This document shows, one piece after another, positions 18,117 through 36,568 of a stretch of 64,000 bases of DNA. A program made the position numbers and the translations under genes. The stretch comes from Setoptus koraiensis (Eukaryota; Animalia; Arthropoda). A model generated the notes under the pieces. The model ran no database searches and was not told where the DNA came from. It was given only the letters and a program-made list of their open reading frames with translations. The stretch lies in the NCBI GenBank assembly GCA_048013815.1, contig CM106586.1, positions 7,626,001-7,690,000 of the forward strand. The letters run 5' to 3'. The number at the start of each line of letters is the position of its first letter. Positions within the stretch are counted from its first letter, which is position 1.

Positions 18117-19682
18117 TTATTTTGCCAGATAGTATATATTGAAGAGCGAAGCCGGTCGTCTGGAATTATCGTTGTAGAATGGGCCGTAACTATGCTCAAC
18201 CCAAATGGAACATAGTATACTAAAAACTACAAGTAATAAGAGGGACCCAACAGCTATAGCAAGACCAATTCCAATTTCAGCACCCGGCGATCCGCCCAAA
18301 TAATGGAAATGATGTCCGGGAGGGTAATGATGGTGAGGAGCGACGAAGTGGTTGGTCACGTGAGCGAAGGCACTACCAGAAACGGCGCTCGTGCCACCAA
18401 ACTGGACCTCGCCTTCGGGATCTTCCATATCACTCATGAATGATTGCGTGAATGACTTGTCGAATGCGGACAATTTTATGAATTCGGCAACGCGACGTTC
18501 ATGGGCACTCACTCGCCTCAAAAGCCACGCTTTCAAGCCTCGCGAATAGGTGAAAATTTTGATGCTGGGATCAAACGTGATAACAGTGTCGATAATCTCG
18601 TAAAATCTATGCGCTACAATGTCCTGTTCGATACGTCCCTCATTCTTTGTTACGTCGACAACGAGTGCTTGCTCGTTCGAAGCATCTTTTTCAAATTTCA
18701 GGGGGCTTTTTTGCTCTAAATCGACATTGACATGCACAATAAGAATACCCTGGCAATATTGAACTGCGCGAATCCATTTTTGTATTCTTTCATCATTGGT
18801 GATGCTCTGGTCTAGTTTGCCTCGATCGTCTCGAGCCAAGTAACCCCGCCATGCTAACTGGGCAATTGTGTAGATTGAACTTCGAGCGTATCCATCAATC
18901 AACTGGCAGGCGCCCTTAACCTTCATGAAATCCTCATACATGCCCACCGAATTCATTGTAACTTCAATTGAAAATACCGTATCTGGTCCGGGTTTCAACG
19001 AATCGAACAAAACGATATTTTCTACCCTCGTAAATAGGTTCGGGGCGTATTTCGCGGTTAGACTAAACAGCTTGCGCATTTCAGGTGACAAATTTTTTGC
19101 GTTTTCATCATCGAAACGCAAATCGTTTTTTGTTGCCAATGCGACAATTTTATCAACTGCTTCTGCTGATTCGGAATTTTTCTCCGCCAATTCCAGCTTC
19201 TGCCCCAGGGATCTCTTACAAGTTAGCACAACTTGTCCAGCGAACAATCTGAAGAATTGCGATAATCTATGCTTCTTCTTGCGATGTAGATATTTGCCAC
19301 GAATGCCATTATTTTTGATTCGTCGATCGTACTGCAACAATTGAGCAGTGAAGTCTGGATCGCACACCGAGTGAATTGACGATGCTTGTCGAACTATTTT
19401 TCGAAGCATCTCGATTTCTTGTGCTCCGTTTAAAGATCTCAAGCAAGAATTAATTAGTGAATGTTGATAGAAATTGACCACGCGAAAAGCGATGGGAGCG
19501 TCATCTTCCGGCAGTAATTTTTCCGCGAGGTCCAGAAATTTGTCGACTGTATCCATCTTCGCAATCATTTTGACACACTGTTTTTTGGTCAGTGTCCATT
19601 TCGCAGTTTCACTGTGAACTATGCTGGTAGATAAAAATCCACCAACTAAGATCACACATATCACCAATTTGAAGTTGCTCAT
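18117..19682 (-). CDS. Orphan signal-peptide/C-terminal TM protein, paralogue 1 (521 aa from MSNFKLVIC)
   Basis: Intronless ORF. Met at 19682 aligns with the starts of the other three paralogues. Hydrophobic N-terminus, six conserved ectodomain Cys, QFGG motif, His-rich segment, GxxxG-type TM helix. Confidence 0.9.
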   Translation of the reverse strand: MSNFKLVICVILVGGFLSTSIVHSETAKWTLTKKQCVKMIAKMDTVDKFLDLAEKLLPEDDAPIAFRVVNFYQHSLINSCLRSLNGAQEIEMLRKIVRQASSIHSVCDPDFTAQLLQYDRRIKNNGIRGKYLHRKKKHRLSQFFRLFAGQVVLTCKRSLGQKLELAEKNSESAEAVDKIVALATKNDLRFDDENAKNLSPEMRKLFSLTAKYAPNLFTRVENIVLFDSLKPGPDTVFSIEVTMNSVGMYEDFMKVKGACQLIDGYARSSIYTIAQLAWRGYLARDDRGKLDQSITNDERIQKWIRAVQYCQGILIVHVNVDLEQKSPLKFEKDASNEQALVVDVTKNEGRIEQDIVAHRFYEIIDTVITFDPSIKIFTYSRGLKAWLLRRVSAHERRVAEFIKLSAFDKSFTQSFMSDMEDPEGEVQFGGTSAVSGSAFAHVTNHFVAPHHHYPPGHHFHYLGGSPGAEIGIGLAIAVGSLLLLVVFSILCSIWVEHSYGPFYNDNSRRPASLFNIYYLAK

Positions 19683-19822
19683 TGTTGTATCATATTCTGA
19701 ATAAATTTTCGGGTATTTGTTTAAACAATTGAGCATTAAAGTATTGATAATGTAGTCGAAATCGGCGGTTCCTCACCGCCATTCTCATCCGATTTCGCCA
19801 TAGTTCGTTCAACGCGTGATTG

Positions 19823-20050
19823 TCCCGAAACTTCTATATATTGTAGTCATGCTTAGAATTTTGTTCCCTCTTTCAGACTACGAAAATGGCTGCATATTTG
19901 TTGCTATTTTAGTTCCCTGAACTCTATTTTTGCTCACTTAGCCAACATTCCAATTCGCAGTGCTCATGGCAACAAATACGGAGCCATTTTCGTAGTTCGA
20001 ACAAGGGAAAAAAATCTTAAGCATGACTGCAATAGGTAAAAATTTCGGGA
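19823..20050. repeat. Inverted repeat at the centre of the head-to-head gene pair (82 bp arms, 64 bp spacer)
   Basis: 19823-19904 vs reverse complement of 19969-20050: 68/82 identical, ungapped, by hand alignment. Confidence 0.9.
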
Positions 20051-20238
20051 TGAGTACGTTCAGAACGACACATAGGTGGTTCTCGGATGACAATAGTTGT
20101 AAAGTCATTCTTAAAATAGTTAGTCCATTGTAAATCGAAGAGCAGCTGGAATCGTCAATCCTTAGTACATTATCAATAGTCTAATGTTTAATTGTTTAAA
20201 CAAATGTCGAAAATCCATCTCGAATAAAAGAAAAAACA

Positions 20239-21753
20239 ATGAGTAGCTCCAAATTGGTGATATGTGTGATCTTAGTTGGTGGATTTTTATCTACCAGCAT
20301 AGTTCACAGTGCAACTACAGAAGAGACACTGACCAAAAAACAGTGTGTCAGAATGATTGCGAAGATGGATACAGTCGACAAATTTCTGGACCTCGCGGAA
20401 AAATTACTGCCGGAAGATGACGCTCCCATCGATTTTCGCGTGGTCAATTTCTATCAACATTCATTAATTAATTCTTGCTTGAGATCTTTAAACGGAGCAC
20501 AAGAAATCGAGATGCTTCGAAAATTAGTCCGACAAGCATCGTCAATTCACTCGGTGTGCGATCCAGACTTCACCGCTCAATTGTTGCAGTACGATCGACA
20601 AATCAAAAATAATGGCATCAGTGGCAAATATTTGCATCGCGAAAAGAAACATAGATTATCGCAATTCTTCAGATTGTTCGCTGGACAAGTTGTGCTAACT
20701 TGCAAGAAATCGTTGGGGCAGAAACTGGAATTGGCGGAGAAAAACTCAGAATTAGTGGACGCAGTTGATAAAATTGTCGCATTAGCAAAGAAAAACGATT
20801 TGCGTCTCGATGATGCAAACGCGGCAAATCTATCTCCCAAGATGCGCGAGCTGCTTACTCTAACTACGAAGAAAATTCCGGATCTAATGACAAAGGTAGA
20901 AAATATCGTTTTGTTCGATTCATTGAAACCCGAACCCGATACAGTATTTTCGATTGAAGTTACAATGAATTCGGCAGGCATGCTTGAAGATTTCATGAAG
21001 ATTAAGGGCGCCTGTAAGTTGATTGATGCATACGCTCGAAGCTCGATCTACACAATAGCTCAATTAGCATGGCGAGGTTACTTGGCGCGAGACGATCGGG
21101 GCGATCTAGATCAAAGAATCACCAATGATGAAAGAATTCAAAAATGGATTCGCGCAGTTCAATATTGCCAGGGTGTCCTGATTGTGCATGTCAATGTCGA
21201 TCTGGAGCAAGAAAGCCCGCTAGAATTCGAGAAGGACGGTTCGAATAAGCAAGCAATTGTTGTCGATATATTAAAGAATGAGTGGCAAATCGGAAGCATT
21301 CCAACGCACAGATTTGACGAGATAACTGACGCTGTTACGACGTTTGATCCTAACATTAAAATTTTCACCTATTCGCGAGGCCTGAAAGCGTGGTTCTTGA
21401 GACGAGTGAGTGCCGATGAACGTCAAATAGCCGAATTCATAAAGTTGTCCGCATTCGACGAATCTTTCAAGCAATCATTCATGAGTGATATGGGAGATCC
21501 CGAAGGCGAGGTTCAGTTTGGTGGTACGAGTGCCGTTTCCGGTAGTGCTTTCAGTCACGTGACCAATCACATCGTCATTCCTGGTCATCATTACCCTCCC
21601 GGACATCATATGCATTATTTGGGTGGATCACCAGGTGCTGAAATTGGAATTGCCTTTGCTATAGCAATTGGATCTGTCTTTTTACTTACGGTTTTCAGTC
21701 ATTTGTGTTCGGCTTGGGTTAATCGTGGACGCAGTGGACCATACCGTGGGTGA
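20239..21753 (+). CDS. Orphan signal-peptide/C-terminal TM protein, paralogue 2 (504 aa)
   Basis: Intronless ORF highly similar to paralogue 1; AATAAA at 21921-21926. Confidence 0.92.
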   Translation: MSSSKLVICVILVGGFLSTSIVHSATTEETLTKKQCVRMIAKMDTVDKFLDLAEKLLPEDDAPIDFRVVNFYQHSLINSCLRSLNGAQEIEMLRKLVRQASSIHSVCDPDFTAQLLQYDRQIKNNGISGKYLHREKKHRLSQFFRLFAGQVVLTCKKSLGQKLELAEKNSELVDAVDKIVALAKKNDLRLDDANAANLSPKMRELLTLTTKKIPDLMTKVENIVLFDSLKPEPDTVFSIEVTMNSAGMLEDFMKIKGACKLIDAYARSSIYTIAQLAWRGYLARDDRGDLDQRITNDERIQKWIRAVQYCQGVLIVHVNVDLEQESPLEFEKDGSNKQAIVVDILKNEWQIGSIPTHRFDEITDAVTTFDPNIKIFTYSRGLKAWFLRRVSADERQIAEFIKLSAFDESFKQSFMSDMGDPEGEVQFGGTSAVSGSAFSHVTNHIVIPGHHYPPGHHMHYLGGSPGAEIGIAFAIAIGSVFLLTVFSHLCSAWVNRGRSGPYRG

Positions 21754-22110
21754 GAGGGGCCTATTTTCGAAGGATCGAATTGCAAAAGGATTTGAAAAGA
21801 AAGAATATCGAATGGAAGATAATTAAGAGATCAAATCGTAGAGGGCAAAAATTTGCTTCTCGTGGTGCTTATATAGCACAAGTGAACGAACGCTCCGCGA
21901 TACTTCAATTTTGTTGATCGAATAAAATTGTTTTTTGCTGCGAATATACAAGGTTGTTAAACCCATTTTTTTTAATCGCTTCTTCAAATCGTATATGGAA
22001 AATCTATCCGGGTTCTCTTCGTCGGGGCTTGGGGCAATTTCTTCTACAAACTCTTCTGGCCCTTTGTTGCTCCTTGAATTCCGACTAACAATCCTCCAGC
22101 AATACTAATG

Positions 22111-22329
22111 TAAGTGAACAAAAATAGAATTGAGGGAACTAAAATAGTCACAGATATGCAGCCATTTTCATGGTCTGAAAAAAGGAAATGTTTGAGCATG
22201 GCTACAACAGATAGAAATTTTGGAATGATCACGAATAGGGCCAACTATAGTGAAATCGAGATCGGATGTCAATCAAGGTCAGGAATCGGCGATCTTGAAA
22301 ACGTTATCAATACTTTTATGTTCAATTGT
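22111..22329 (+). promoter_or_regulatory. Orphan copy of the family upstream/promoter region with no gene behind it
   Basis: Aligns with the reverse complement of ~19715-19940 (e.g. GGGAACTAAAATAG, ATATGCAGCCATTTTC, TTATCAATACTTT). Confidence 0.7.
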
Positions 22330-22339
22330 GTACTCTGAT

Positions 22340-22735
22340 CAATTTTGGTACTATAATCGACATTTGATAGAGCAGACACTGTATCAATCTCATCAACCAG
22401 GACTTCACCCTCGGGATCCTCCATATCACTTATAATTTATTGTCTAAATGATGATCGAATGCTGATAATTTTATAGATTCGGCCATACAATACTCACTCT
22501 CACCCATGGGGTTTGATGGCAACTCTCTCAACTTGCGAATGAGTATAATATTCAACATTGGATTCGAATGTAGTGGCAGTGTCGAGAATTCATTATATCT
22601 ATGCGCTAACCTGCATTGTTCTCCTATGCGTAAACAATAATAGCCTGCTCACCATCAGAAGCTTTTTCGATCAGTTCAATCTGGCTTTCCTGATCAAAAT
22701 CGACAATAACCGGAGAAATAAGTAACCATCACGCA
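22340..22735 (-). pseudogene. Degraded fragment of the same family (C-terminal half)
   Basis: Minus strand reads LLISPVIVDFDQESQ (cf. ILIVHVNVDLEQESP), LAHRYNE, DTATTFESN and ISDMEDPEGEV, interrupted by a TAG and frameshifts. Confidence 0.8.
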
Positions 22736-22948
22736 CCAGTCTCATATACTCGCGGGAGGTACAATTTTATTCAATCAATAAAATTCAAATCCCGTGGAAC
22801 TAGCGTTCATTTGTGCTATGTAAGCACCACGAGGAGTGGTTTCTTAATTTTCTGCCATTCGAAACTGCATCTTTCGACATTCTTCATCGTTATTCGATCT
22901 TTCGCGGCTCAGTCCAACGTCGTTCGAATTTTCGACAAAAAGTCCCTC

Positions 22949-24433
22949 CTAATAATAGCCTGTTTTATGTCTAATCCAACTGGCACATAATGAATGCAAA
23001 ACCGCAATTAAAAAAGTGCCTCCGACCGCTATAGCTATGGCAATTCCAACTGTAGCGCCCGGAGATCCGCCTAAGTAATGAACATGATATCCGGGAGGGT
23101 AATGATGATGATAAATCACGCAGTGATTTGTCACGTGAGCAAATGCACCACCGGACACGGCACTCGAACCACCAAACTGGACCTCGCATTCGGGATCTTC
23201 CATATCACTCATAATTGATTCCTTGAATGATTCGTCGAATGAGGACAACTTTATAAATTGGGCTATGCGACGTTCATGGGCACTTATTCGTCTCGAGAGC
23301 CACGCTTTCAGACCTTGCAAATAGGTGAAAATTTTGATATTAGGATCAAACGTGGTAACAGTGTCGGTGATCTCGTTAAATCTATGCGCTAGAATGTCCT
23401 GTCCCTCAGTTTTGGTTACGTCAACAACAAGTGCTAGCTCATTTGAACCATCTTTCTCGAATTCTAGCGGGCTTTCTTGCTCTAAATCGACATTGACATG
23501 AACAATAAGAATACCCTGGCAATATTGAACTGCGCGAATCCATTTTTGAATTCTTTCATCATTGGTGATGCTCTGATCTAGTTTGCCCCGATCGTCTCGA
23601 GCCAAATAACCTCGCCATGCTAATTGAGCAATTGCGTAGATTGAACTTCGAGCATATCCATCAATCAACTTGCAAGCGCCCTTAATCTTCATGAAGTCCT
23701 CAAGCATGCCCGCCGAATTCATTGTAACTTCAATTGAAAATACTGTATCTGGTCCGGGTTTCAACGAATCGAACAAAACGATATTTTCTACCTTTGTAAA
23801 TAGGTTCGGGGAATAGTTTGCAGTTAGACTAAGGAGCTTGCGCATATCGGGTGACAGATTTTTCGCATTTTCATCATCGAAATGCAAATCGTTCTTCGTC
23901 GCCAGTCCAACGATTTTATCGACTGCCTTCACTGAGTCAGAATTTCTTTCCGCCAATTCCAGTTTCTGCCCCAGGGATCTCTTGCAAGTTAGCACAACTT
24001 GTCCAGCGAACAACCTGAAGAATTGCGATAATCTATGTTTCTTCTTGCGATGCAAATATTTGCCACGAATGCCATTATTTTTGATCTGTCTATCGTACTG
24101 CAACAATTGGTCGGTGAAATGTGGTTCACACACAGAGTGAATTGACGATGCTTGTCGAACTATTTTCCGAAGGTTTTCGATATCCTCTTTTCCGTGCACA
24201 CTTCGCAAGCAAAAATCAATAACTGTATTTATATGGTATTCGATGGGAGGGGCATTTTCTGGCATTAGTTTATCCGCGAGGTTTAGAAATTTGTCCACTG
24301 TATCAATCTTTTCAATCATTTTGACGCACTGATCTTTGGTCAATGTCCCTTTCACAATTGTACTGTGAACCATGTTGGTGTATAAGAATCCACCAACTAG
24401 GATCACACAAATCATAAAATTGTAGCTACTCAT
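22949..24433 (-). CDS. Orphan signal-peptide/C-terminal TM protein, paralogue 3 (494 aa)
   Basis: Intronless ORF with the same architecture; minus-strand AATAAA at 22766-22771. Confidence 0.92.
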   Translation of the reverse strand: MSSYNFMICVILVGGFLYTNMVHSTIVKGTLTKDQCVKMIEKIDTVDKFLNLADKLMPENAPPIEYHINTVIDFCLRSVHGKEDIENLRKIVRQASSIHSVCEPHFTDQLLQYDRQIKNNGIRGKYLHRKKKHRLSQFFRLFAGQVVLTCKRSLGQKLELAERNSDSVKAVDKIVGLATKNDLHFDDENAKNLSPDMRKLLSLTANYSPNLFTKVENIVLFDSLKPGPDTVFSIEVTMNSAGMLEDFMKIKGACKLIDGYARSSIYAIAQLAWRGYLARDDRGKLDQSITNDERIQKWIRAVQYCQGILIVHVNVDLEQESPLEFEKDGSNELALVVDVTKTEGQDILAHRFNEITDTVTTFDPNIKIFTYLQGLKAWLSRRISAHERRIAQFIKLSSFDESFKESIMSDMEDPECEVQFGGSSAVSGGAFAHVTNHCVIYHHHYPPGYHVHYLGGSPGATVGIAIAIAVGGTFLIAVLHSLCASWIRHKTGYY

Positions 24434-24824
24434 CGCTTTTTTTTATTCGAGATAGATTCTCGGCTACTTGTTAAACATCAAACTATAGGTAATGTACTCA
24501 AGATCGACGATTCTTCACCACAATTGCCATCCGAGCTCAAGTTCAATACTCTCCGTTCTGCGAGTAATCATCCCGAAATTTCTGTATGTTACAGTCATGC
24601 TAAAACATTTTCCCTTTTTCATAATTTTGAAATGGCTCCATATCTGTGTCTCTTTCAGTTCCCCAACTCTATTTTTACTCACTAAGCCAACATTCCAATT
24701 CGCAGCGCTCATGTCCAAAACGAATCGATATTAACTGACGGATTGTAAAGTTCTAAACGTTTGTCTTATATTCGATCTTCGCTGTTCCTCCGCAAACCTT
24801 ATGCCCGATACGGAGTATTAGCTT

Positions 24825-25023
24825 TGTGTCAAAATGATTGCGAGAATGGATACAGTTGACAAATACGTCATCACAATGACGAATTACAAATGACAGGATA
24901 TCGAATGATAGAAGATTAAAAGATCAAATCGTAGAAGGCAAAAATTTATTCCTTGTGGTGCTTACATGACACAAGTGAACGGAGGATCCACAAGACTTGA
25001 ATTTTGTTGATTGAATAAAATTG
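24825..25023 (+). pseudogene. Internally deleted family remnant (N-terminal fragment joined to 3' UTR)
   Basis: 24825-24866 encodes CVKMIARMDTVDKY; ~24897-25023 matches the paralogue 2 3' UTR (~21805-21930), including AATAAA at 25014. Confidence 0.75.
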
Positions 25024-25405
25024 CATAACCCTCTTACGTTTAACCTAAGCGAGGGGGAGAAAGGGGCCCAACAAAAGGACCCATAATTTTCCATAGTTGT
25101 TTTCCGGTCCTTAGTAGGACATTCTTTTGTTGTTCGTTCCATTACGTTGCACGTAATCATTGTTAGCTCACCTCGATGGAAAGTTGGTCTAATAATAAAC
25201 TTCGCTCGAGTATCAATTGGCAGAGACAGAGTCGCTAAAAGATTGTTTTTTCCACTGGATTCCAGAAAAATAATATTAATAGACTCTCTCCATATAACCC
25301 GTCCAATAGAACAGTCACAAATGGTTTCAATATATTGCAAGCAATGATTTCGAATTAAAAAATTGCAGTTTATCCTTGATTGTCGTGCTCTGATTAATTT
25401 CGATA

Positions 25406-26161
25406 ATGCATCTATTCAATGTCATCATTATTGCTGTAGGGACTCTCATGTTTGTCATGAGTTTCAGTTCATTGATGGTTAACGGACAGGAGCGATTTTT
25501 GGAACAAATAAAGATGATCAACGATCAAGTTGAAAAATGGTACCAGAAAGAATCTCATCTGTTGTCGAATCTCAAAGAGGTTGCTGGACATGCCAGTGCG
25601 GTTCATCTGCAAAGTAAGAGTCAGCATTGGCCAAGACTAATGATGAAAGTATTACAAGTGGCCACTTACACAGGCAAGTTTTGGCCATTTGAATTATCGA
25701 GTGAGGTGGACATGGGAACCGTCACTCATCTTGTGGCCGGGTTACATAATGACATTCCATCAGCAAAGAGACAACTCAGCCGTAATTTCAACTGGTATAT
25801 AAATTACAAGGGCAGATTTCGCAATGCAGATAGTGATGTGTATGTCGAGCAGATGAAAAAATTGTGCTACCCCTACGGTGACCACAGCAAAAATTATTTC
25901 AACTTCCAAAAAGCCATTAACGATCTTTTAAAGATAGCCAAGGAGGAGAATGTTGACGATAAACAGTTCAATGAGCTTGTCATCACTAGTAAGGAGCCTA
26001 TTGCGCCACTTTATTCTACAGCAAAGATCTGTCAATCGATCATAGTGGCAGCAACCTCGCTTCCTCCGCAATGGTTCGTATGGTCTGAACCTGCCGAAAG
26101 TCAGCTCAAGGCATGGCCCTACCCCGGGATCTGGATTTTTCCAGAGGATAAAGAATATTGA
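25406..26161 (+). CDS. Orphan predicted secreted protein (251 aa)
   Basis: Long high-complexity ORF with a hydrophobic N-terminus (MHLFNVIIIAVGTLMFVMSFSSLMVNG), two Cys and no TM; family not recognised. Confidence 0.8.
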   Translation: MHLFNVIIIAVGTLMFVMSFSSLMVNGQERFLEQIKMINDQVEKWYQKESHLLSNLKEVAGHASAVHLQSKSQHWPRLMMKVLQVATYTGKFWPFELSSEVDMGTVTHLVAGLHNDIPSAKRQLSRNFNWYINYKGRFRNADSDVYVEQMKKLCYPYGDHSKNYFNFQKAINDLLKIAKEENVDDKQFNELVITSKEPIAPLYSTAKICQSIIVAATSLPPQWFVWSEPAESQLKAWPYPGIWIFPEDKEY

Positions 26162-26941
26162 TGACGATCGAGCAATCCAGGGCCTGATGAGATCATGGCC
26201 AGATTAAAACAAAGGACCTAACAAGTCGACCCGTTTATTTGGTGTATTGGATCACTTAAACATTCTCGATGTTGAGAGAGTTGGAACAATCTCTCTTGCC
26301 GAGATTTGAATAATTTTTCGTAGTGTAAGATAATGAAACTGGAGACCAGAAGAATAAGAAACTTATCATGCATTACCCCTTAATGAAGCATTTCACATTC
26401 TTTCAAATGTGTATAGCATATGTGTTGGTGCTAGTAACTATGTACAAATCAGGGTATGAGAAATGAGAATGGAAAACTTGGGTCGGAATTACTGTGATCT
26501 TTCGAACCAATAGGTAGATTGATTTTGGGAAAAATTCCATGCATAAATGGTTGCTGGATCAAAAGTGTGACACATTTTGCTGTTTGTGTAACGAATTCAA
26601 TATAGCAATTGAGTCTAGATGGAGACGCAAGTTCAAGTTTCGCTTCACCCAGTTATTCTCTTGAGTTCTCGATCAACACCACAGCTAGTTTGACGTTTTA
26701 CTTTGGCGGAGCTAGCTGTTTTTTTCAATTTTTCTGAATCATCATCGGAGTTTTTGTTCGCGATGTTCAACCTATCATAGACAGAAATTAAATTAAACAG
26801 AAATACCTGAAGAAACAAATATCCGTCACGCATCAATCCCACTTACTCACAGGAAATACAATTTTATTCAAATAACAGAATTGAAATCTCGTAAATCTCC
26901 CGTTCAATTGTTGGTATGTAAGCATCACGGGTAACAAATTT

Positions 26942-28504
26942 TTACCTCTCTGAATTTGATTTTTTACCGACCGTTCGGTATAAATCAAATGTATAAAATT
27001 GACGGCCGTAATAATAAGAGCCGTATTTATGTCTAGTCCAATTCGCGCATAATCTACCGAAAACCATAATTAAAAAGGTGGCTGCAATTGCTATAGCGAA
27101 GGCAATTCCAATTTCAGCACCCAAAGATCCACCGATATAATGGGGATTCCATTGGGGACCGAAATGATGTTGAGAAACGGCGATGTGATTGGTCACGTGA
27201 CTGAAAGCACTCCCGGAAACGGCACTCGTGCCACCAAACTGGACCTGGCCTTCGGGATCTTCCATATCACTCATGAATGATTGCTTGAATGATTCGTCGA
27301 ATTCGGACAACTTTATGAATTCGGCTATGCGACGTTCATCGGCACTTATTCGTCTCAAGAGCCACGCTTTCAGGCCTCGCGAATAGGTGAAAATTTTAAT
27401 GTTGGGATCAAACGTGGTAACAGTGTCAGTGATCTCGCTAAATCTATGCACTAGAATGTCTTCCCCTGTTCGTCCCTCATTCTTTGCTACGTCAACAACA
27501 AGTGCTTCCTCATTCGAAGAATCTTTTTCAAATTTCATAGGGTTTTCTTGCTCTAAATCGACATTGACATGCACAATAAGAATACCCTGGCAATATTGAA
27601 CTGCGCGAATCCATTTTTGAATTCTTTCATCATTGGTGATGCTTTGATCTAGATCGCCCCGATCGTCTCGAGCCAAATAACCTCGCCATGCTAATTGAGC
27701 AATTGCGTAGATTGAACTTTGAGCGTATCCATCAATCAACTGGCAGGCGCCTTTGATCTTTATGAAATCCTCAAGCATGTCGGCCGAGTTCATTGTAACT
27801 TCAATTGAAAATGCTGTATCGGGTTCAGGTTTTAACGCATCGAACAAGACGATATTTTCTACCTTTGTAAATAGGTTCGGGGAATAGTTTGCAGTTAGAC
27901 TAAACAGCTTGCGCATTTCGGGTGACAAATTTTTTGCGTTTTCATCATCGAAACGCAAATCGTTTTTTGTTGCCAATGCGACAATTTTATCGACTGCTTT
28001 CGCTGATTCGGAACTTTTCTCCGCCAATTCCAGCTTCTGCCCTAACGATCTCTTGCAAGTTAGCACAACTTGTCCAGCGAACAACCTGAAGAATTGCGAT
28101 AATCTGTGCTTCTTCTTGCGATGCAAATATTTGCCACGAATGCCATTATTTTTTATTTGTCTATCGTACTGCAACAATTGGTCGGTGAAATGTGGTTCAC
28201 ACACAGAGTGAATTGACGATGCTTGTCGAACTATTTTTCGGAGGTTTTCGATATCCTCTTTTCCGTGGACACTTCGCAGGCAAAAATCAATTACTGTATT
28301 TATATGGTATTCGATGGGAGGGGCATTTTCTGGCATCAGTTTATCCGCAAGATTTAGAAACTTGTCCACTGTATCAATCTTTTCAATCATTTTGACGCAT
28401 TGATCTTTGGTCAATGTCCCTTTCACAATTGTACTGTGAACCATGTTGGTGTATAAGAATCCACCAACTAGGATCACACAAATCATAAATTTGTAGCTAC
28501 TCAT
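26942..28504 (-). CDS. Orphan signal-peptide/C-terminal TM protein, paralogue 4 (520 aa)
   Basis: Intronless ORF; first ~160 aa nearly identical to paralogue 3; minus-strand AATAAA at 26863-26868. Confidence 0.92.
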   Translation of the reverse strand: MSSYKFMICVILVGGFLYTNMVHSTIVKGTLTKDQCVKMIEKIDTVDKFLNLADKLMPENAPPIEYHINTVIDFCLRSVHGKEDIENLRKIVRQASSIHSVCEPHFTDQLLQYDRQIKNNGIRGKYLHRKKKHRLSQFFRLFAGQVVLTCKRSLGQKLELAEKSSESAKAVDKIVALATKNDLRFDDENAKNLSPEMRKLFSLTANYSPNLFTKVENIVLFDALKPEPDTAFSIEVTMNSADMLEDFIKIKGACQLIDGYAQSSIYAIAQLAWRGYLARDDRGDLDQSITNDERIQKWIRAVQYCQGILIVHVNVDLEQENPMKFEKDSSNEEALVVDVAKNEGRTGEDILVHRFSEITDTVTTFDPNIKIFTYSRGLKAWLLRRISADERRIAEFIKLSEFDESFKQSFMSDMEDPEGQVQFGGTSAVSGSAFSHVTNHIAVSQHHFGPQWNPHYIGGSLGAEIGIAFAIAIAATFLIMVFGRLCANWTRHKYGSYYYGRQFYTFDLYRTVGKKSNSER

Positions 28505-29764: not shown

Positions 29765-29954
29765 TGTTAGGCTATGGAATCAGAAGTCCTTTATTTAAAA
29801 GCGTGCACATGTTTTTATAGTCGTAGTCGTGCAGTAAGGTGAACACAGTATAGAATAAAGGCACAGAATAGTATGTGCCGCACAGAATATGATAAAGTAA
29901 GAATAGTTTAGCGCGCAGCGCTTGAGTTGTGGCAAAGGATGCCAGATCCTAACA
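29765..29954 (-). repeat. 3' LTR (190 bp)
   Basis: TGTTAGG...CCTAACA terminal inverted repeat; 173/177 identical to 36579-36755; minus-strand AATAAA at 29790-29795 and TATAAAA nearby. Confidence 0.97.
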
Positions 29955-29968
29955 TCCCGCCCCTTTAA
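29955..29968 (-). other. Polypurine tract
   Basis: Minus strand TTAAAGGGGCGGGA directly abuts the 3' LTR. Confidence 0.85.
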
Positions 29969-29979
29969 GATGGTTCCTC

Positions 29980-32900
29980 CTAATATAAGCGGAGCTTGCT
30001 TTGCTTATGGCTCATCTTTACATGTGTTGGCAGCGTTTGTCCGTAACCTCCGGAGTACATATACTCCGGCATGTATGATGCTGTATAAACTATGATGTTT
30101 CGGAAAGGCTTCAACGCTAGACGGAGAATCGCTATTAGAATGAATACTACAGGCGAAATACAAGTCCAAATAGCCAATAGGGCTATGGCCATGAGGATGT
30201 AAGTCACACTTTGAAGATTTAAAATAGGTGAAAGATCTACGCTTCCTGTGAGGGCTTCCGCAGCTGCTTTTAGTCCTGGGTGTTTGGGCAGGTCCTGTAT
30301 CCATTGTACGGTTGAAATGTTGGCCAAATATTGAGGCATGTTGTCTAATTTGTCGCCTGACTTCTCGTACCCTTCGACTACAATTGGTAGCCGGTACGTT
30401 GCGAATTTGTAATTAATCTTCGACATAGCCGCGTCGATATTCGTTGTGCTGAGGGATATCTTTCGGGCTTCGAAGATATTGTTTCCTGTGACGAAGGTTA
30501 CCTCGTCTGGTAGCTTGAATGGAAAACTCGGGCATGGCACTGTCCCTGATTCCAGGCTGATGTTGCCTGGGAAGCAGTAGATATGGTTGTAGTTGTCGTG
30601 TGCCACGACTTTGCCCAGGTTAAATGTAATATCTTGTCGTTTAAAGCATTGTGTAGTGTTCCATTTATTTGTTACGTCCGGTTTCGAGAATGCCTGGACA
30701 CACTCAGCTCTGTAGGTGTTGTCTTTGAGTATATCGCTACTGTTTACTTCCTGGTAGCACCCTGAGGTGGCATTGACCAGTACCGTCTTGGGTCCGATAT
30801 AGGAATTTAGGCAAAGCTCATTGTTCGTTCCGTTCCAGTATTGGAACGGTTCGGCTTCCATGATCGCCGAAGCTTGGTCAATCAGGTGTGTAGTAAATGC
30901 AAGGATTAATTTGTCATCTTCCACAACGCATGATCGTGGTTTTCCGTAGCTCATTATGTTATGGTTGTATTGTTTGGGTACTCCGAACAAGTGAAAGAGT
31001 TCGGGTGCGATCCCATCTTCGTAGAACCATTTGTCACGTGCTTTCTTTATATTCAGGTTTATGGTCTGGAGTTTATCCATATACTCGGCCATAAGGATGG
31101 ACGATGCCAGGTTGAGTCCTTGTTCGGTCTGGATCGTCACTATCTCTTTAGCAAACTTCTTAAGGTATTTCTCGGTGAGGTTGTGATCAGTCTGGACTGC
31201 TCTTCTCAAGTCTTCTACTTTAGCGTCTAGCTTACGGAGGATGCCTTCGGAATTTTCTTGTGAGGCTCGTAATTGTACGACGGACTTCTTCAAATAGGGG
31301 ACATCATTCAGTTTGACGTCTAACGCCAGCACAAGCGAACTTGTAGAAATCGCAATGGCGGCTACGTCCCCAACGAACCTCCTTTGTCTGTCCGCTGAGT
31401 TGGTGTAGTTACAAAACCCTTTTATCGGCAGCAGCACCAACTCCCTAAATTTCTCGTAGCATTTTTCGCTCAGCATGGTATCGGACGCGTTCGACGCTGT
31501 TGATCCATCGAATAGCGCGTGACATGGATCGTCAAAGATGACGTCCATGTTGTAGTGGACCATCCCTTTTACTACGGGTATATTGGTCTTCGTCCAGATT
31601 ACCGTGTCGGTTGGTATAAATACTGCGTTTGTCATCATAAATATGCTAAATAAGGTTTGGGCTAATAGTACTAGGTTTATAGTCCTTGGAATAAGCTTTT
31701 GTTTGCGTCTACCTTGGTTGTTTGTTGTGGTTTGGTCGTCTGCTGTTGTTTCTGCTTGTTCTGTCCTTTCTGCGTTGGCCTCCTCGTCCAAGTCGATGAC
31801 GGTTGTTGTCGATTCATCTCCTGTTCTGAACGGTTTCATTCTTGAAACATGAGCGGTTGTTATTTTGCCTTTCTTTGCGACCAATTCTAGTTTGTATATA
31901 TCATTATTTTTCACGCCTATCACCTCATACGGGCCTTGGTATCTGGCGATTAGCTTCGACCCGTCCTTGTTGCTGCGTGGTTCGAAGTGTAGCATGACCA
32001 GGTCGCTCACGGCGTACTTAACTGGTCTGTGTTGGCCGTCATATCGTTGTTTAGAGGCGGCATTGGCGGAGCTTATCCGGTCGAGCACCCTAAGCCGGGT
32101 TAGCTCGATCTCGGATGCGATCATCTCCGCATATTGTTCTGCTCGAGAACTTATCTTGATCGGTCCTCCCGGAAGCCTGAGTTTTCTTCCGTAGAGGACT
32201 TCATATGGCGTTATGCCAGTAGTACTGTGTTTGGTGGCATTGACGGCAAGGACGGACATTCCTAGTGCTTCGTCCCATTCCATGTCGTCACGACCTTGTA
32301 TGCTCATAGCGATTTTGTCCTCCAAGGTTTGGATGGCCCTCTCCACCAGCCCGTTACCTTGGTGGTGGTAAGGGGTGGAGAAGGTCATTTTAATACCAAA
32401 GGCTGCCGTTACGTCTTTTGTTAGATTGGCCTTGAATGCAGGCCCATTATCGGTATGCAATTGCTCTGGCACTCCGTGCAAGGCAATTACATCGTTAATC
32501 AAGAATTTAACAAATTCTTCCGCACTAGTAGACCGGGTCGGTCTGGCGATTATGAATTTCGAGAAAGCACAAGTTGCGACTATGACGTGCGCATTCTTGT
32601 GTCGTGTTTGTTTAAGCGGACCTAGATGGTCGCAGCATATCATCTGAAAGGGATGAGCTGTTTCGAAGGAATGCATAGTCCCTGCTGGCGCCATTCTTGG
32701 GACTTTGTGCTTTTGGCAGATTAGGCACTGCTCGACCGTTCTCTTAACGTCGTCTTCTAACGTTTTCCAATAATAATTCTCTCTTACTAAATCGATTGTT
32801 TGTTTGACACCTGCGTGTCCCGCGGCGTGGACTGAGTTAATTACGCCTGGTCTCTTTGCTAGTGGGACCAGCAGTTTTCCCCGTCGATATAGGAATTCAT

Positions 32901-35900
32901 TGTTTATCTCGAACTCGCTGTCCCCGCGTTCTAAGCTTTCGATAGCCTTTTGGCACTCTTCGTCAGTGTCGTAGAGTACCCTATAATCGTCTAAAGGGAT
33001 TACCAACATAAGGAATTTGCTTTCGTCTAGCCCATCGACTGTGCCTCCCGTCGGCTGTCGCGACAGGCAGTCGACGTCGGTATGTTGTCTACCTGATCGG
33101 TAGACGATATTCAAATTATATTCGGATAGCGCAATTGCCCATCGGGCAAGCTTACCTGTTAACGGTTTAGTTCGGCCCAATGTGCATAGGGCACAATGGT
33201 CGACTATAACCGTACATTCTTGTCCGTAAATGTACTGACGAAATTTCTGAATGCTGTAAATAAGGGCTGCACCTTCGAGTTCGGTGACCCCGTAGCTCTC
33301 TTCGTTGGAGCATGTTCGGCGGCTGGCCGTCGCGATTATCCTCCAGTCATTTCTCTGTTTTTGGTAAAGAATACCGCCGAAGCCTATCTTTGAAGCATCG
33401 GTCTTTAGTAGTAGTGGCAAGCCTGGCACAAAGTACGAGATAGCCTCGCTTTCTATTAGAGCCTTTTTCAACTGCTCGAAGCTCTTCTGGTGCTCGTCTG
33501 TCCATGTAAATCTATTGTCCTTTTTGGTGAGGTCAGTAAGTGGCGCCGCGATCCACGCGAATCTTGGCACAAAGCGTCTATAGTAGCCAAACAGTCCTAG
33601 AGTTTGGCGTACCTGCTCCAGGCTAGTTGGTACCTGTAAGCCGCTTATCGCTTTTATTTTATCGGGTTGTGGCTCTATACCACTTTTGCTTAGTTTGTGG
33701 CCAAGAATATTTGCGGACGCCATAGCGAATTGGCATTTTCTTGCCTTGATTGTGAGATTATGTTCAGATAGACGTTCTAGTACTGATTCTAGACTTTCCA
33801 AGTGTTTGTTCCAAGTTTTAGACATGATCACTATATCATCAAGATATGCGAATATCTGTTGTCCTACGATGCCTGACAAAACTATGGACATCATTCGACT
33901 AAACGACGCCGCGGCATTACAAAGACCGAATGGCAGGCGAAGGAATTCGTACAGTCCGTTGGCTGTCATAAAGGCTGTGAATTCCCTTGACGCCTCGTCT
34001 AATGGCATCTGCCAATAGCCGGCGTTAAGATCTATGCAAGTGAAAAATTCCGCACCATTACCGCTTTCTAATATCTCTTCTTGGTTTGGAAGCGGGTAGA
34101 CCCACTTCTTTGTTGCCGCGTTCAGACGTCTATAATCGACGCAAAATCTAATTGTTCCGTCGCGCTTCTTGACCAGGACAACTGGACTGGCGAACGGCGA
34201 CTGCGAATGCCGAATAACGCCTTTGTCCAGCATGTCCTGAACTTCGTTTTGGATTAGGTCGCGCTCCTTGTATGCGAGGCGCCTGAGCGGCGTCTTGAAT
34301 GGGGTCGGGTCAAGCAATTCTATTTTGTGTGTGTACGCTGATGTACATCCTAGTTTCTCTCCTGCGGAGAACACGTGTTTGTAGTTATTTATGACGGAGA
34401 TTAGCTGACCCTGCTGTTGCTTGGACAGGTGATCGCCAATTTCAATGTCGCCAATGTCGCCAGCCTGGATTATGGCCATTGTCTTCCTATTTTCGCTTGT
34501 GTCCAGATGTTCTGGCGAATATGTTTGCGCTTTATACTCGTTATCCACGGCGTCCCAAGACGCTAACTGCTCCAGGCCTTTGATTTCGATTGGGCTCTTG
34601 GTCGGGTTGGCTATTGTTGTTATTATCTTCTCGTCCGCGATCATGTTGATGCTTTTGGGCAGCAGCGCCTGGTCTTCTCTGTGTTTAGGCTCGATAATTA
34701 TAAGTTTGTTCTTATTGGTTGACCCGTTAATTTTGAGTTCAACCGTTATAATTGAATTCGCTGGGACTTTTATAGGATTGATAGCGTGGCAGCTTCCTTC
34801 CGGGAATGGCTCTACGTTACTTGGCGTTGCATTAGTAATCATGTCGTCGTTCGCTCCTCCGACGAAGATGTTTCTTTCTCTTATGATGTCTTTACCTACG
34901 ATCGCGTCGAAGGGAAGTTCTGTTGCGACCGTGAGTTCGTGTTCAAAGTTGTGTTGCTGATTGAGAGTATTTAATGTTATTTTGACCGTTGTCTCTTTGA
35001 GCTCGCCCATAGAGGTGCCGTTAGCTGTCCCCATGGTGAGGCTAGTTGGCGTGAGCGTTAGATTTAGCTGTAGGGCCTTACTTTCTTTGATCATTGAGGA
35101 CGATGCGCCTGTGTCTATCAGTGCTGTGACAGGCTTGTTGTTTATGAAGATTTTCCTCAGGAAGGGTTTCTCTGGGGCTATGTAGGCTACCACACGGTTA
35201 TTGTTGTTATTACCGTCGTTCTGGTTACGAGGTGGGGCATCGTTTGATTGTTGTCTGTTGTCGCCATAGTTGTTGTGAGGTGGGCCATTGTTGTTACGGT
35301 TGCTGTAGTTGTTGTTCCTAGGCTGCTGTTGGTTACCGCGGTAGTGTCCGTTGTTGTTTCTACCTCGGCCTCTGAATCCGTTACCCTGCTGATTATGGTT
35401 ATCTTGTTGATTGTTGTTTCGGTTATTATTGTAGTTGCTATTCTGATTGTTGTTACGGTAATCTCCTCGAGAGTTGTTGCGTGAGTAGTTGCCTCGGTTG
35501 TTGTTGCCTTGATGATTATTTCTCCTGTTGAAGTTGTTGTTTTGATTGTTGTTATAACCGTTATTTTGATTGTTGTTATAGCCGTTGTTTTGGTTGTTTC
35601 TCTTGCGGCACACATCCCAAGTGTGGCCTCTTTTGTGGCAGTGGTTGCAGCTTACGTTGTTATTATTCGACCTATCACCCCTGTTGTAGATGGCGTTAGC
35701 TTTGCCTTTGCAAGCTTCACGTTTGCGGTTACCTTCTTCTATGAGGCTACAGGTTTTGAGTAACTCTATAAGAGTGAGAGGGTTGGCCTGGGTGAGGTAT
35801 GGTTCGAAAGATGGTAATAGTCTTTCTTTGATTTTATCGACGATTTCTGATTCGTCCATCGACGGATTATATTCTTTGCATAAATAGCGCATGTCGACGA

Positions 35901-36348
35901 TGAAGTTTGTTACGGGTTCTTCCTCCTTTTGTCGTTTACGATCTAACTCACGTGCGATGACTGTCTTCGTTGCTTGTGGCAGGAAGGTCTCTTCGAATAA
36001 CTTCTTGATTTGGTTGATGTCCTCCTTTAAGGGGATTGCTAATGCTGGTGCGTCTGGTGGCGGTGGTGGTAGTATGGCTATTTTGTACCAGTTAAGGGCT
36101 GTTCCTTTGAGAAAAACTGGAAAGCGTATGGCCTTGGTCTTATCGTCCCAGCCGTTGAGCTCTGAATCGAACATGTACGTGTTGATCCAGGCTCGTGCTG
36201 TGTCGCGGTCGCCTTCATATATCTCTATTTTCTTCCTCATCCGGAATCCTTCCTCGAATGTTCCGGTCAACCCGGCGACGTTGCCATCGGTTGAATCTTG
36301 ATTACCGCCAGTTCTTTGCTGACTGTTGCTAGTGCCTTGGTCGGCCAT
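29980..36348 (-). CDS. Gag-Pol-Env polyprotein (2122 aa, single ORF)
   Basis: CCHC knuckle CNHCHKRGHTWDVC; protease LIDTGASS; RT PFGLCNA/YLDD; RNase H TDASKIGFGG; integrase HHCC, D,D-35-E region and GPY motif; then signal-like segment, RQRR/FVG cleavage site, 8 N-glycosylation sequons and C-terminal TM. Confidence 0.95.
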   Translation of the reverse strand: MADQGTSNSQQRTGGNQDSTDGNVAGLTGTFEEGFRMRKKIEIYEGDRDTARAWINTYMFDSELNGWDDKTKAIRFPVFLKGTALNWYKIAILPPPPPDAPALAIPLKEDINQIKKLFEETFLPQATKTVIARELDRKRQKEEEPVTNFIVDMRYLCKEYNPSMDESEIVDKIKERLLPSFEPYLTQANPLTLIELLKTCSLIEEGNRKREACKGKANAIYNRGDRSNNNNVSCNHCHKRGHTWDVCRKRNNQNNGYNNNQNNGYNNNQNNNFNRRNNHQGNNNRGNYSRNNSRGDYRNNNQNSNYNNNRNNNQQDNHNQQGNGFRGRGRNNNGHYRGNQQQPRNNNYSNRNNNGPPHNNYGDNRQQSNDAPPRNQNDGNNNNNRVVAYIAPEKPFLRKIFINNKPVTALIDTGASSSMIKESKALQLNLTLTPTSLTMGTANGTSMGELKETTVKITLNTLNQQHNFEHELTVATELPFDAIVGKDIIRERNIFVGGANDDMITNATPSNVEPFPEGSCHAINPIKVPANSIITVELKINGSTNKNKLIIIEPKHREDQALLPKSINMIADEKIITTIANPTKSPIEIKGLEQLASWDAVDNEYKAQTYSPEHLDTSENRKTMAIIQAGDIGDIEIGDHLSKQQQGQLISVINNYKHVFSAGEKLGCTSAYTHKIELLDPTPFKTPLRRLAYKERDLIQNEVQDMLDKGVIRHSQSPFASPVVLVKKRDGTIRFCVDYRRLNAATKKWVYPLPNQEEILESGNGAEFFTCIDLNAGYWQMPLDEASREFTAFMTANGLYEFLRLPFGLCNAAASFSRMMSIVLSGIVGQQIFAYLDDIVIMSKTWNKHLESLESVLERLSEHNLTIKARKCQFAMASANILGHKLSKSGIEPQPDKIKAISGLQVPTSLEQVRQTLGLFGYYRRFVPRFAWIAAPLTDLTKKDNRFTWTDEHQKSFEQLKKALIESEAISYFVPGLPLLLKTDASKIGFGGILYQKQRNDWRIIATASRRTCSNEESYGVTELEGAALIYSIQKFRQYIYGQECTVIVDHCALCTLGRTKPLTGKLARWAIALSEYNLNIVYRSGRQHTDVDCLSRQPTGGTVDGLDESKFLMLVIPLDDYRVLYDTDEECQKAIESLERGDSEFEINNEFLYRRGKLLVPLAKRPGVINSVHAAGHAGVKQTIDLVRENYYWKTLEDDVKRTVEQCLICQKHKVPRMAPAGTMHSFETAHPFQMICCDHLGPLKQTRHKNAHVIVATCAFSKFIIARPTRSTSAEEFVKFLINDVIALHGVPEQLHTDNGPAFKANLTKDVTAAFGIKMTFSTPYHHQGNGLVERAIQTLEDKIAMSIQGRDDMEWDEALGMSVLAVNATKHSTTGITPYEVLYGRKLRLPGGPIKISSRAEQYAEMIASEIELTRLRVLDRISSANAASKQRYDGQHRPVKYAVSDLVMLHFEPRSNKDGSKLIARYQGPYEVIGVKNNDIYKLELVAKKGKITTAHVSRMKPFRTGDESTTTVIDLDEEANAERTEQAETTADDQTTTNNQGRRKQKLIPRTINLVLLAQTLFSIFMMTNAVFIPTDTVIWTKTNIPVVKGMVHYNMDVIFDDPCHALFDGSTASNASDTMLSEKCYEKFRELVLLPIKGFCNYTNSADRQRRFVGDVAAIAISTSSLVLALDVKLNDVPYLKKSVVQLRASQENSEGILRKLDAKVEDLRRAVQTDHNLTEKYLKKFAKEIVTIQTEQGLNLASSILMAEYMDKLQTINLNIKKARDKWFYEDGIAPELFHLFGVPKQYNHNIMSYGKPRSCVVEDDKLILAFTTHLIDQASAIMEAEPFQYWNGTNNELCLNSYIGPKTVLVNATSGCYQEVNSSDILKDNTYRAECVQAFSKPDVTNKWNTTQCFKRQDITFNLGKVVAHDNYNHIYCFPGNISLESGTVPCPSFPFKLPDEVTFVTGNNIFEARKISLSTTNIDAAMSKINYKFATYRLPIVVEGYEKSGDKLDNMPQYLANISTVQWIQDLPKHPGLKAAAEALTGSVDLSPILNLQSVTYILMAIALLAIWTCISPVVFILIAILRLALKPFRNIIVYTASYMPEYMYSGGYGQTLPTHVKMSHKQSKLRLY

Positions 36349-36568
36349 TGTTGAGACGTTTGGAGTCTGGAACTCCTCGTTGTTTTCTGATTCTAATAAG
36401 TCGACGATGTGTTCTTTAAAGAACTTGTTGATATTACTTTTCTTGATTGATGTAACTAGTTGTTCGAGAAGGGGTCTGGCCTCCTCGGGGCTTTCGTGAT
36501 CACCAATTTTACTGCTTTGTTGACTTTGAATTAACTAACTAACTTGCATGTGAGTCCGAGTTCTACTC

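What the first reader, a model, noticed from the sequence alone, without database searches (positions are those of the whole stretch)
18117..28504. Tandem cluster of an unrecognised signal-peptide/TM protein family, candidate effector or host-interaction locus
Seen: four intact intronless paralogues (494-521 aa) plus two remnants within ~11 kb. They share a signal peptide, six ectodomain Cys and strongly conserved cores (QFFRLFAGQVVLTCK; AWRGYLARDDRG; KWIRAVQYCQG), with a variable N-terminal segment and variable tails. I recognise no known domain. Inference: birth-and-death expansion with localised variability is typical of host-interaction proteins; if this is a plant-feeding mite, these are candidate salivary or gall effectors, or surface receptors.
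Basis: partly seen in the sequence, partly recalled or inferred. Interest (0 to 1): 0.75.

Follow-up and report, generated by a model that had tools for sequence, protein, structure and literature searches.

The report
Mite-only surface protein family, expanded
Four neighbouring genes encode membrane-anchored proteins of a family found only in gall and rust mites (eriophyoids), which has grown to about 75 loci in this tiny genome; it resembles no known domain or solved structure, and it evolves under purifying selection rather than like arms-race effectors.

Summary
There are four intact, intronless paralogues of 494-521 aa, 75-84% identical. Each has a signal peptide, six invariant ectodomain cysteines, a His-rich stalk, one C-terminal membrane helix and a short tail. 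Decayed scraps of two further copies lie between them.

The genome is very probably the pine-needle eriophyoid mite Setoptus koraiensis. Genome-wide I found 93 family ORFs:
- 42 intact membrane-anchored forms.
- 28 intact shorter forms with a signal peptide but no anchor.
- 23 fragments or odd forms.

That is over 1% of about 6,000 annotated genes.

No Pfam domain matches. A profile search of 1.84 billion proteins gave only 52 hits, all unnamed. One distant branch is shown to sit in an eriophyoid, on one contig; the source species of the rest could not be looked up. A good AlphaFold model (pLDDT 79) matches nothing in PDB or BFVD.

Selection is purifying throughout (omega 0.12-0.45, and no 30-codon window above 0.78). 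The variable parts are the signal peptide, loops, membrane helix and tail.

My best reading is cell-surface binding or receptor-like proteins with soluble paralogues. The window genes are unlikely to be injected effectors. Function and expression are untested.

The parts
18117..19682 (-). Copy 1, 521 aa: signal peptide, helical six-Cys ectodomain, His-rich stalk, membrane helix, 28-aa Tyr-rich tail. The ORF runs on to an upstream ATG at 19736, which is probably not the start.
19683..20238 (.). Shared divergent 5' intergenic region of copies 1 and 2. It forms the centre of an inverted duplication spanning 18198-21720, whose arms are 82.5% identical.
20239..21753 (+). Copy 2, 504 aa. This is the reference for numbering and for the AlphaFold models.
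22350..22608 (-). Remnant 1: a decayed fragment matching residues about 348-439 of the family. A piece like the 5' flank lies beside it at 22111-22332.
22949..24433 (-). Copy 3, 494 aa.
24825..25023 (+). Remnant 2: an almost wholly deleted copy. It keeps 40 nt of N-terminal coding sequence (24825-24864, 90-92% identical to copies 1 and 2) and 136 nt of 3'-flank homology (24888-25023).
26942..28504 (-). Copy 4, 520 aa. It lies outside the neighbouring LTR element, whose near LTR is at 29765-29941.

Best explanation
**What it is.** The four genes encode type I (single-pass) membrane proteins of a superfamily that I could trace only to eriophyoid mites.

**Architecture (copy-2 numbering).**
- A cleaved signal peptide.
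- An alpha-helical domain of about 290 aa, probably braced by three disulfides formed by the six invariant Cys.
- A smaller mixed alpha/beta region, roughly residues 316-430.
- A His-rich, disordered stalk ending in a conserved GGSPGAE-type motif.
- One membrane helix.
- A short, poorly conserved, often Tyr-rich cytoplasmic tail.

**Shown.** The architecture, the family size, the age of the duplications, purifying selection, and the lack of any detectable relative outside unnamed public assemblies.

**Inferred.** The proteins sit on the mite's own cell surfaces, and the conserved helical ectodomain acts as a binding or recognition module (receptor, co-receptor or adhesion-like). The 28 anchor-less short paralogues elsewhere in the genome would be soluble, secreted versions of the same module. 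The window cluster arose by one inverted duplication and further tandem duplications, followed by partial decay of two more copies.

I give about 0.9 to the structural and family description. I give about 0.4 to the reading 'own-surface binding or receptor protein rather than injected effector'. The confidence value of 0.45 is for the statement as a whole.
For: **Architecture**
- ORFs and alignments.
- The AlphaFold2 model built on 72 sequences has pLDDT 79.1 and pTM 0.75. It shows a confident helical domain at residues 30-320 and a helix at 465-498.
- 39 of 42 long forms have an N-terminal hydrophobic peak. All 42 have a C-terminal one followed by a median 15-aa tail. The 45 aa before the helix hold a median of 6 His.

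**Family size and form**
- 93 ORFs in total: 42 long, 28 short without an anchor, and 23 fragments or odd forms.

**Real genes under constraint**
- Omega is 0.24-0.34 among the window copies.
- Omega is 0.12-0.45 (median 0.31) in 33 close pairs across the family.
- Omega is 0.14-0.36 in windows over ectodomain residues 31-330, in 11 independent sister pairs.

**Taxon restriction**
- Only 52 hits among 1.84e9 representative proteins. Every one I looked up is unnamed and comes from Logan, ENA or JGI.
- The kinesin-8 gene beside a distant family member is 65% identical over its full length to the Aceria tosichella protein. The next named species reaches only 40%.

**Old diversification**
- External sequences interleave with at least 10 subclades of this genome.
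Against:
- The signal peptide and membrane helix rest on hydropathy and the AlphaFold model, not on dedicated predictors.
- The ectodomain could be shed. The conserved small-residue motif before the helix could be a cleavage or GPI-type site, although tails of 5-50 aa argue against GPI.
- A large, taxon-restricted, tandemly arrayed secretory family in a herbivore is also what an effector repertoire looks like, and 28 members really are anchor-less.
- Window-level omega below 1 does not exclude positive selection at single sites.
Confidence: 0.45

Rival explanations
1. These are salivary or host-manipulating effectors. The proteins, or shed ectodomains, would be delivered into the plant to suppress defence or alter tissue.
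For: - Signal peptide, taxon-restricted family, tandem arrays and birth-and-death turnover.
- A 28-gene short subfamily with a signal peptide and no anchor.
- The host organism is an obligate plant feeder.
- Family places sit near a second large family of signal-peptide ORFs far more often than chance: 8 of 50 places against 0.8 expected.
Against: - All four window genes keep a membrane helix and a tail.
- Omega is 0.14-0.36 over residues 31-330 of the ectodomain and never above 0.78 in any window.
- Subclades are shared with other source organisms.
- No duplication is very recent; the lowest dS is 0.138.
- There are no expression data either way.
Confidence: 0.2
2. This is a domesticated envelope or fusion glycoprotein taken from a retroelement or virus. 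The argument is the type I helical ectodomain protein sitting next to an env-carrying Ty3/gypsy element.
For: - Type I architecture with a long helical ectodomain.
- Copy 4 lies 1.3 kb from a young Gag-Pol-Env element.
Against: - Profile comparison with that element's Env region gives probability 0.16%.
- No BFVD structural match; the best E is 0.33 with TM about 0.1.
- The element's LTRs at 29765-29941 and 36579-36755 exclude copy 4.
- Family members lie at 50 places. I did not systematically check those places for nearby pol genes.
Confidence: 0.03
3. This is an alpha-helical pore-forming toxin of the ClyA/Nhe/Hbl type, or a bundle like Cry toxin domain I, used against microbes or plant cells.
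For: - ClyA-family toxins (NheA, SmhA, MakE, MakA, XaxA and XaxB, AhlB) recur among the weak Foldseek rows, at E 0.5-3.
- Cry toxin domain I appears at Z 4.4-5.8.
Against: - TM-scores are about 0.1.
- Re-alignment with VIA-align gives Z 2.4-2.8 at rmsd of about 10-13 A for the ClyA-type chains.
- All Z values lie below the tool's stated noise level for helical models (under about 13).
- Pfam Bacillus_HBL matches 1 of 72 members, at E 0.027.
Confidence: 0.03
4. These are non-functional or decaying ORFs: a dead repeat family that only looks like genes.
For: - About a quarter of family ORFs are fragments or interrupted.
- No transcript evidence was available.
Against: - 70 ORFs of about 330-570 codons stay open at dS of 0.14-0.84 with omega about 0.3.
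- The invariant cysteine framework is kept.
- Related sequences occur in other assemblies.
Confidence: 0.02

Closest known systems
Unnamed eriophyoid single-copy type I membrane protein (alignment A4, e.g. P0025, P0059), encoded beside the kinesin-8 (KIF18A-like) gene
   Same: - True but distant homologue: 60-100 bits to the family profile, aligned over its full length.
- Same layout: signal peptide, helical domain, conserved Cys, the Q-V-x-x-x-C-K and W-x-x-x-x-Q-x-C-Q-G type motifs, and a C-terminal membrane helix.
   Different: - About 525 aa, apparently single copy, with a conserved cytoplasmic tail.
- It lies next to kinesin-8 on L039.
- This genome has no close orthologue: the best match is 109 bits, against 548-751 bits among full-length A4 members.
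- Its function is equally unknown.
Taxon-restricted secreted effector families of plant-feeding arthropods, such as aphid 'bicycle' proteins, Hessian-fly SSGPs and spider-mite saliva families. This comparison is recalled from my own knowledge and was not tested by sequence.
   Same: An orphan secretory-pathway family, large for the genome, in tandem arrays, in an obligate herbivore.
   Different: - Those families are soluble, usually small, and typically show strong diversifying selection and salivary-gland expression.
- Here the window genes are membrane-anchored, about 500 aa long, and under purifying selection.
- No expression data are available here.
Insect odorant-binding proteins: six-Cys, all-helical, secreted binding proteins (Pfam PBP_GOBP)
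   Same: Six conserved cysteines in an all-helical secreted domain, and many tandem paralogues.
   Different: - The domain is about 290 aa rather than about 120.
- No Pfam match in any of 72 members, and no structural match.
- Most members are membrane-anchored.
- This is an analogy only, not membership.
ClyA/Nhe/Hbl alpha-pore-forming toxins and Cry toxin domain I
   Same: Long helical bundle with a small beta element, and recurrent weak Foldseek rows.
   Different: Z 2.4-2.8 for the ClyA type and at most 5.8 for Cry domain I, with TM about 0.1. This is within noise for helical proteins.

Membership tests
The eriophyoid six-Cys helical superfamily defined here (alignments A3 and A5) | Significant full-length match to the family profile | tested here: met
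   All four window ORFs score 651-666 bits, covering HMM positions 3-471.
The eriophyoid six-Cys helical superfamily defined here (alignments A3 and A5) | Six conserved ectodomain cysteines at fixed positions | tested here: met
   C36, C80, C107, C155, C259 and C310 are invariant in 37 sequences. Four are invariant and two at least 90% conserved in 72 sequences.
Type I single-pass membrane protein (architecture class) | N-terminal signal peptide, one C-terminal membrane helix, and basic residues after the helix | tested here: met
   - Hydropathy peaks of 2.85-3.12 over 12 aa at the N-terminus and 2.35-2.78 over 19 aa near the C-terminus.
- AlphaFold helix at 465-498 with block-mean pLDDT of 63-94.
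- Arg, Lys and His follow the helix.
- No dedicated signal-peptide or membrane-helix predictor was available.
ClyA/Nhe/Hbl alpha-pore-forming toxins | Shared fold, shown by structural alignment clearly above noise | tested here: not met
   Foldseek E 0.5-3 with TM about 0.1. VIA-align Z 2.4-2.8.
ClyA/Nhe/Hbl alpha-pore-forming toxins | Pfam Bacillus_HBL (PF05791) or related profile match | tested here: not met
   1 of 72 members matches, at E 0.027, below the cut-off.
Retroviral or errantiviral envelope (class I fusion) proteins | Sequence-profile or structural similarity to a viral glycoprotein | tested here: not met
   hhalign against the neighbouring element's Env gives probability 0.16%. 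BFVD best E is 0.33.
Insect OBP/PBP_GOBP six-Cys binding proteins | Pfam PBP_GOBP match and a compact six-helix fold of about 120 aa | tested here: not met
   No such Pfam hit among the families listed for the 72 members. No OBP among the structural matches.
Salivary effector (functional class) | Secretion into saliva, or salivary-gland expression | not testable with these tools
Salivary effector (functional class) | Soluble secreted product with no membrane anchor | tested here: not met
   All four window genes carry a C-terminal membrane helix. The criterion is met only by the 28 short paralogues elsewhere in the genome.

The most novel reading that the evidence does not exclude
The superfamily is a previously undescribed, eriophyoid-specific cell-surface recognition system. 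Its ectodomain has a new disulfide-braced helical fold. An ancestral low-copy receptor-like gene was amplified in the Setoptus (phytoptid) lineage into about 40 membrane receptors and about 30 soluble ligand-binding or decoy forms. The repertoire may take over sensing or host- and microbe-recognition tasks in a genome that has almost no gustatory-receptor genes.
Probability: 0.2. Interest if true: 0.8.

Novelty: new variant of a known kind. Interest (0 to 1): 0.5.

Why it matters
**Scale.** Eriophyoid mites are major crop and forest pests with the smallest arthropod genomes, and how they deal with their hosts is molecularly unknown. This genome has about 6,000 annotated genes, and only two sub-threshold gustatory-receptor matches turned up. 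An orphan family of about 70 intact genes is therefore among its largest gene-family investments.

**Novelty of the protein.** It has no Pfam domain, no named homologue and no structural neighbour. Its ectodomain is a candidate new fold and a concrete target for structure determination.

**A testable split.** The division into membrane-anchored and anchor-less forms gives a clear hypothesis: surface module versus soluble module.

**A caution for effector screens.** 'Signal peptide plus expansion' is not enough to call an effector. These genes are anchored and under purifying selection.

Tried and rejected
**Domain and homology searches that found nothing**
- Pfam on the four copies and on all 72 superfamily members gave only scattered sub-threshold noise, such as DUF3963 and IQ.
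- A PDB profile search gave nothing below E 0.25.
- The ESM Atlas gave no usable hit for a window protein or for the distant homologue P0025.

**Fold searches that found nothing**
- First model (pLDDT 63.6): Foldseek PDB and VIA-align wide.
- Second model (pLDDT 79.1): Foldseek PDB, VIA-align wide, BFVD, and VIA-align re-scoring of Foldseek's top chains. The best Z was 6.3 over 84 residues.

**Relationships rejected**
- No relation to the neighbouring Env or to the 251-aa ORF inside the cluster.

- The first metagenome scan, using the A4 profile, found nothing. The second scan, with P0059, gave one contig.
I could not read more than 1.26 kb downstream of this genome's own kinesin-8 gene, nor two further divergent family loci.

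**Other dead ends**
- The IQ-TREE mixture tree did not finish, so FastTree was used instead.
- The bacterial-type promoter scan is irrelevant for a eukaryote.
- A k-mer look at upstream regions showed only ordinary TATA-like boxes.
- Searches of this scan's own findings returned nothing on this family.
Full report
**1. The observation**

- 18117-19682(-), 521 aa. An upstream ATG at 19736 would add 18 residues ahead of the signal peptide. The paralogue alignment argues against that start.
- 20239-21753(+), 504 aa.
- 22949-24433(-), 494 aa.
- 26942-28504(-), 520 aa.

A self-comparison of 16-30 kb shows how the cluster is built:
- Copies 1 and 2, with their shared 5' intergenic region, form one inverted duplication (18198-21720, 82.5% identical).
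- Copies 3 and 4 form a direct duplication (85%).
- Two decayed copies remain. One is a fragment of the C-terminal domain at about 22350-22608(-) (tblastn E 4e-5). The other, at 24825-25023(+), is almost wholly deleted and keeps 40 nt of N-terminal coding sequence plus 136 nt of 3' flank.

A family HMM finds only the four intact genes in the window.

**2. Which organism**

- The window lies at C2:7,626,001-7,690,000 of a 48.76-Mb assembly in two sequences of 24.22 and 24.53 Mb.
- At least 22 arthropod cuticle (R&R, PF00379) domains are present.
- Large genes such as Med12 (2,663 aa) are single ORFs.
- The published chromosome-level genome of the eriophyoid Setoptus koraiensis (Phytoptidae, collected from Pinus koraiensis) has two chromosomes, a scaffold N50 of 24.53 Mb and 5,954 annotated genes (PMC11920263).
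- The N50 equals the length of C2. The identification is therefore very probable but not proven; the paper quotes a total of 47 Mb.
- Earlier notes of this scan also call this genome a gall or eriophyoid mite.

**3. The protein**

Alignment of 37 members shows six invariant cysteines: C36, C80, C107, C155, C259 and C310. With 72 superfamily sequences, AlphaFold2 gives pLDDT 79.1 and pTM 0.75. The model shows:
- a signal-peptide helix;
- a confident, almost all-helical domain at residues 30-320, with a small sheet;
- a less confident alpha/beta region at 316-430;
- a disordered segment at 428-463, which corresponds to the His-rich stalk;
- a helix at 465-498.

Hydropathy and composition across the genome's members agree with this layout. 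The long forms carry a median of 6 His in the 45 residues before the helix, a median tail of 15 aa (range 5-50), and only 1-2 N-glycosylation sequons.

Tails of this length, with basic residues after the helix, argue for a type I membrane protein rather than a GPI signal. That is an inference from sequence.

**4. The family in this genome**

A six-frame protein search gave 90 matches. I fetched the loci and scanned them with the family HMM, which gave 93 ORFs:

| Class | ORFs | Features |
|---|---|---|
| Long form | 42 | Intact, signal peptide plus membrane helix |
| Short form | 28 | Intact, 332-373 aa, signal peptide, same six-Cys domain, no anchor (sequences) |
| Other | 23 | Fragments, split ORFs or odd forms |

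- They lie at 50 places; 23 of these hold more than one ORF and 27 are singletons.
- All matches are continuous open frames without introns.
- This is more than 1% of the annotated gene number.
- For scale, the gustatory-receptor profile finds only two sub-threshold matches in the genome.

**5. Relatives elsewhere**

*Search results*
- The word-indexed search found seven proteins, all from Logan assemblies and unnamed, at 35-49% identity.
- The family scans had left the protein open and the claim rests on absence of relatives. I therefore ran the exhaustive profile search.
- It returned only 52 proteins at E below 1e-3 among 1.84 billion representatives.
- Fifteen of these are close (E below 1e-30). 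A second set of about 520-600 aa aligns over the whole profile at 60-100 bits.
- None that I looked up has a name or a Pfam domain, and all come from Logan, ENA or JGI.

*Provenance of the distant branch*
- One distant member (P0059) sits on a JGI metagenome contig directly downstream of an intronless kinesin-8 gene.
- That kinesin is 65% identical over 100% of its length to the Aceria tosichella protein. The next named species (oribatid and trombidiform mites) reach only 37-42%. The carrier is therefore an eriophyoid.
- This points to conserved synteny.

*State in this genome*
- There is no close orthologue of that branch: the best match is 109 bits.
- No family ORF lies in the 1.26 kb I could read downstream of its own kinesin-8.
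- The genome does hold other old paralogue lineages. These are 53-77% identical to external proteins P0027, P0040, P0045 and P0010.

*Tree (FastTree)*
- External sequences interleave with at least ten subclades of this genome.
- The short forms fall in one clade (support 99), together with two external members.
- The four window genes plus one gene on the other chromosome (C1:10.646 Mb, 68% identity) form a clade with support 100 and no sampled external member.

Diversification is therefore old within the group, followed by local duplication.

**6. No known domain or fold**

- Pfam gives nothing for the window proteins, the distant relatives, or any recurrent family across 72 members.
- A PDB profile search gives nothing, and the ESM Atlas gives nothing.
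- Foldseek against PDB has no match at E of 0.001 or better for either model.
- An exhaustive VIA-align search gives a best Z of 5.8-5.9. The tool states that Z below 8, or below about 13 for helical proteins, may mean only a common arrangement.
- BFVD gives nothing.
- ClyA-type pore-forming toxins recur among Foldseek's weak rows, but on re-alignment they score Z 2.4-2.8 at rmsd of about 10-13 A. I reject that lead.
- Profile comparison with the Env part of the adjacent retroelement gives probability 0.16%.
- The element's LTRs at 29765-29941 and 36579-36755 (98% identical) leave copy 4 outside it.

**7. Selection**

| Comparison | dN/dS | dS |
|---|---|---|
| Among the four window copies | 0.24-0.34 | 0.30-0.48 |
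| 33 close pairs across the family | 0.12-0.45 (median 0.31) | 0.138-0.84 |
| 11 independent sister pairs, 30-codon windows, residues 31-330 | 0.14-0.36 | - |
| Same pairs, loop 331-360 | 0.42 | - |
| Same pairs, signal peptide | 0.45 | - |
| Same pairs, membrane helix and tail | 0.64-0.78 | - |

No window exceeds 1. It sits in segments expected to be weakly constrained, not in an ectodomain patch.

**8. Interpretation**

*Shown*
- A real, constrained, taxon-restricted family of secretory-pathway proteins.
- Two architectures, anchored and soluble.
- Expansion by tandem and inverted duplication, with decay of some copies.

*Inferred*
- The anchored window genes act at the mite's own cell surfaces as binding or recognition modules.
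- The short paralogues are secreted versions of the same module.

*Weighing the effector reading*
- The anchor, the purifying selection and the sharing of subclades with other source organisms all weaken it for the window genes.
- It stays open for the short forms, and for shed ectodomains.

*Limits*
- I found no description of this family in the eriophyoid genome papers or in the wider literature search.

**9. Verdict**

As a phenomenon, a taxon-restricted, tandemly expanded secretory family in a herbivore is a familiar kind of thing. As a protein, it has no known relatives or fold, and it is unusually large for so small a genome. Function and expression remain untested. I therefore score interest as moderate.

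Noticed in passing
window 25406-26161 (+): A 251-aa ORF with a signal peptide, inside the cluster, belongs to a second large lineage-specific family. It has 69 matches in the genome (some are pieces of one frame), in open frames of mostly about 235-300 aa, with big tandem arrays at C2:5.02-5.05 and 5.35-5.37 Mb. It has no Pfam domain and no profile similarity to the 500-aa family. The two families co-locate: 8 of 50 places lie within 10 kb of each other, against 0.8 expected, and 0 of 5000 shuffles reach that.
   Followed up: partly
window 29765-36755 (-): A young Ty3/gypsy-type element with one uninterrupted 2,122-aa Gag-protease-RT-RNaseH-integrase-Env ORF (29980-36348) and 177-nt LTRs that are 98% identical. 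I only observed it. It is unrelated to the family.
   Followed up: partly
window 37654-45645 (+): Mediator subunit Med12 is encoded as a single 2,663-aa ORF without introns. This illustrates the intron-poor state of this genome.
   Followed up: no
L039:7479-11584, and by inference about 10 Logan/ENA contigs: In other eriophyoids, a conserved gene of about 525 aa for a type I membrane protein (the distant branch of the superfamily) lies directly downstream of the kinesin-8 gene. In this genome, the 1.26 kb I could read downstream of kinesin-8 (L040:889-2445) holds no such gene, and no close orthologue exists anywhere.
   Followed up: partly
window 18925-19344(+), 20577-20996(-), 23838-24140(+), 27909-28211(+): Each of the four genes carries an open antisense frame of 100-139 aa over its most conserved part (residues about 113-250). 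This is probably a by-product of codon composition and conservation of the sense strand.
   Followed up: no
whole genome G000: The gustatory-receptor profile (PF08395) gives only two matches, both below the cut-off, in six-frame search. This suggests an almost absent GR repertoire.
   Followed up: no
G000:C1:10149768 region (L081) and G000:C1:1593562-1594707 (L033): These are divergent old paralogue lineages of the superfamily. One is 77% identical to external protein P0027, a form of about 580 aa with a long acidic tail. The other is a 381-aa form, 58% identical to P0040.
   Followed up: partly
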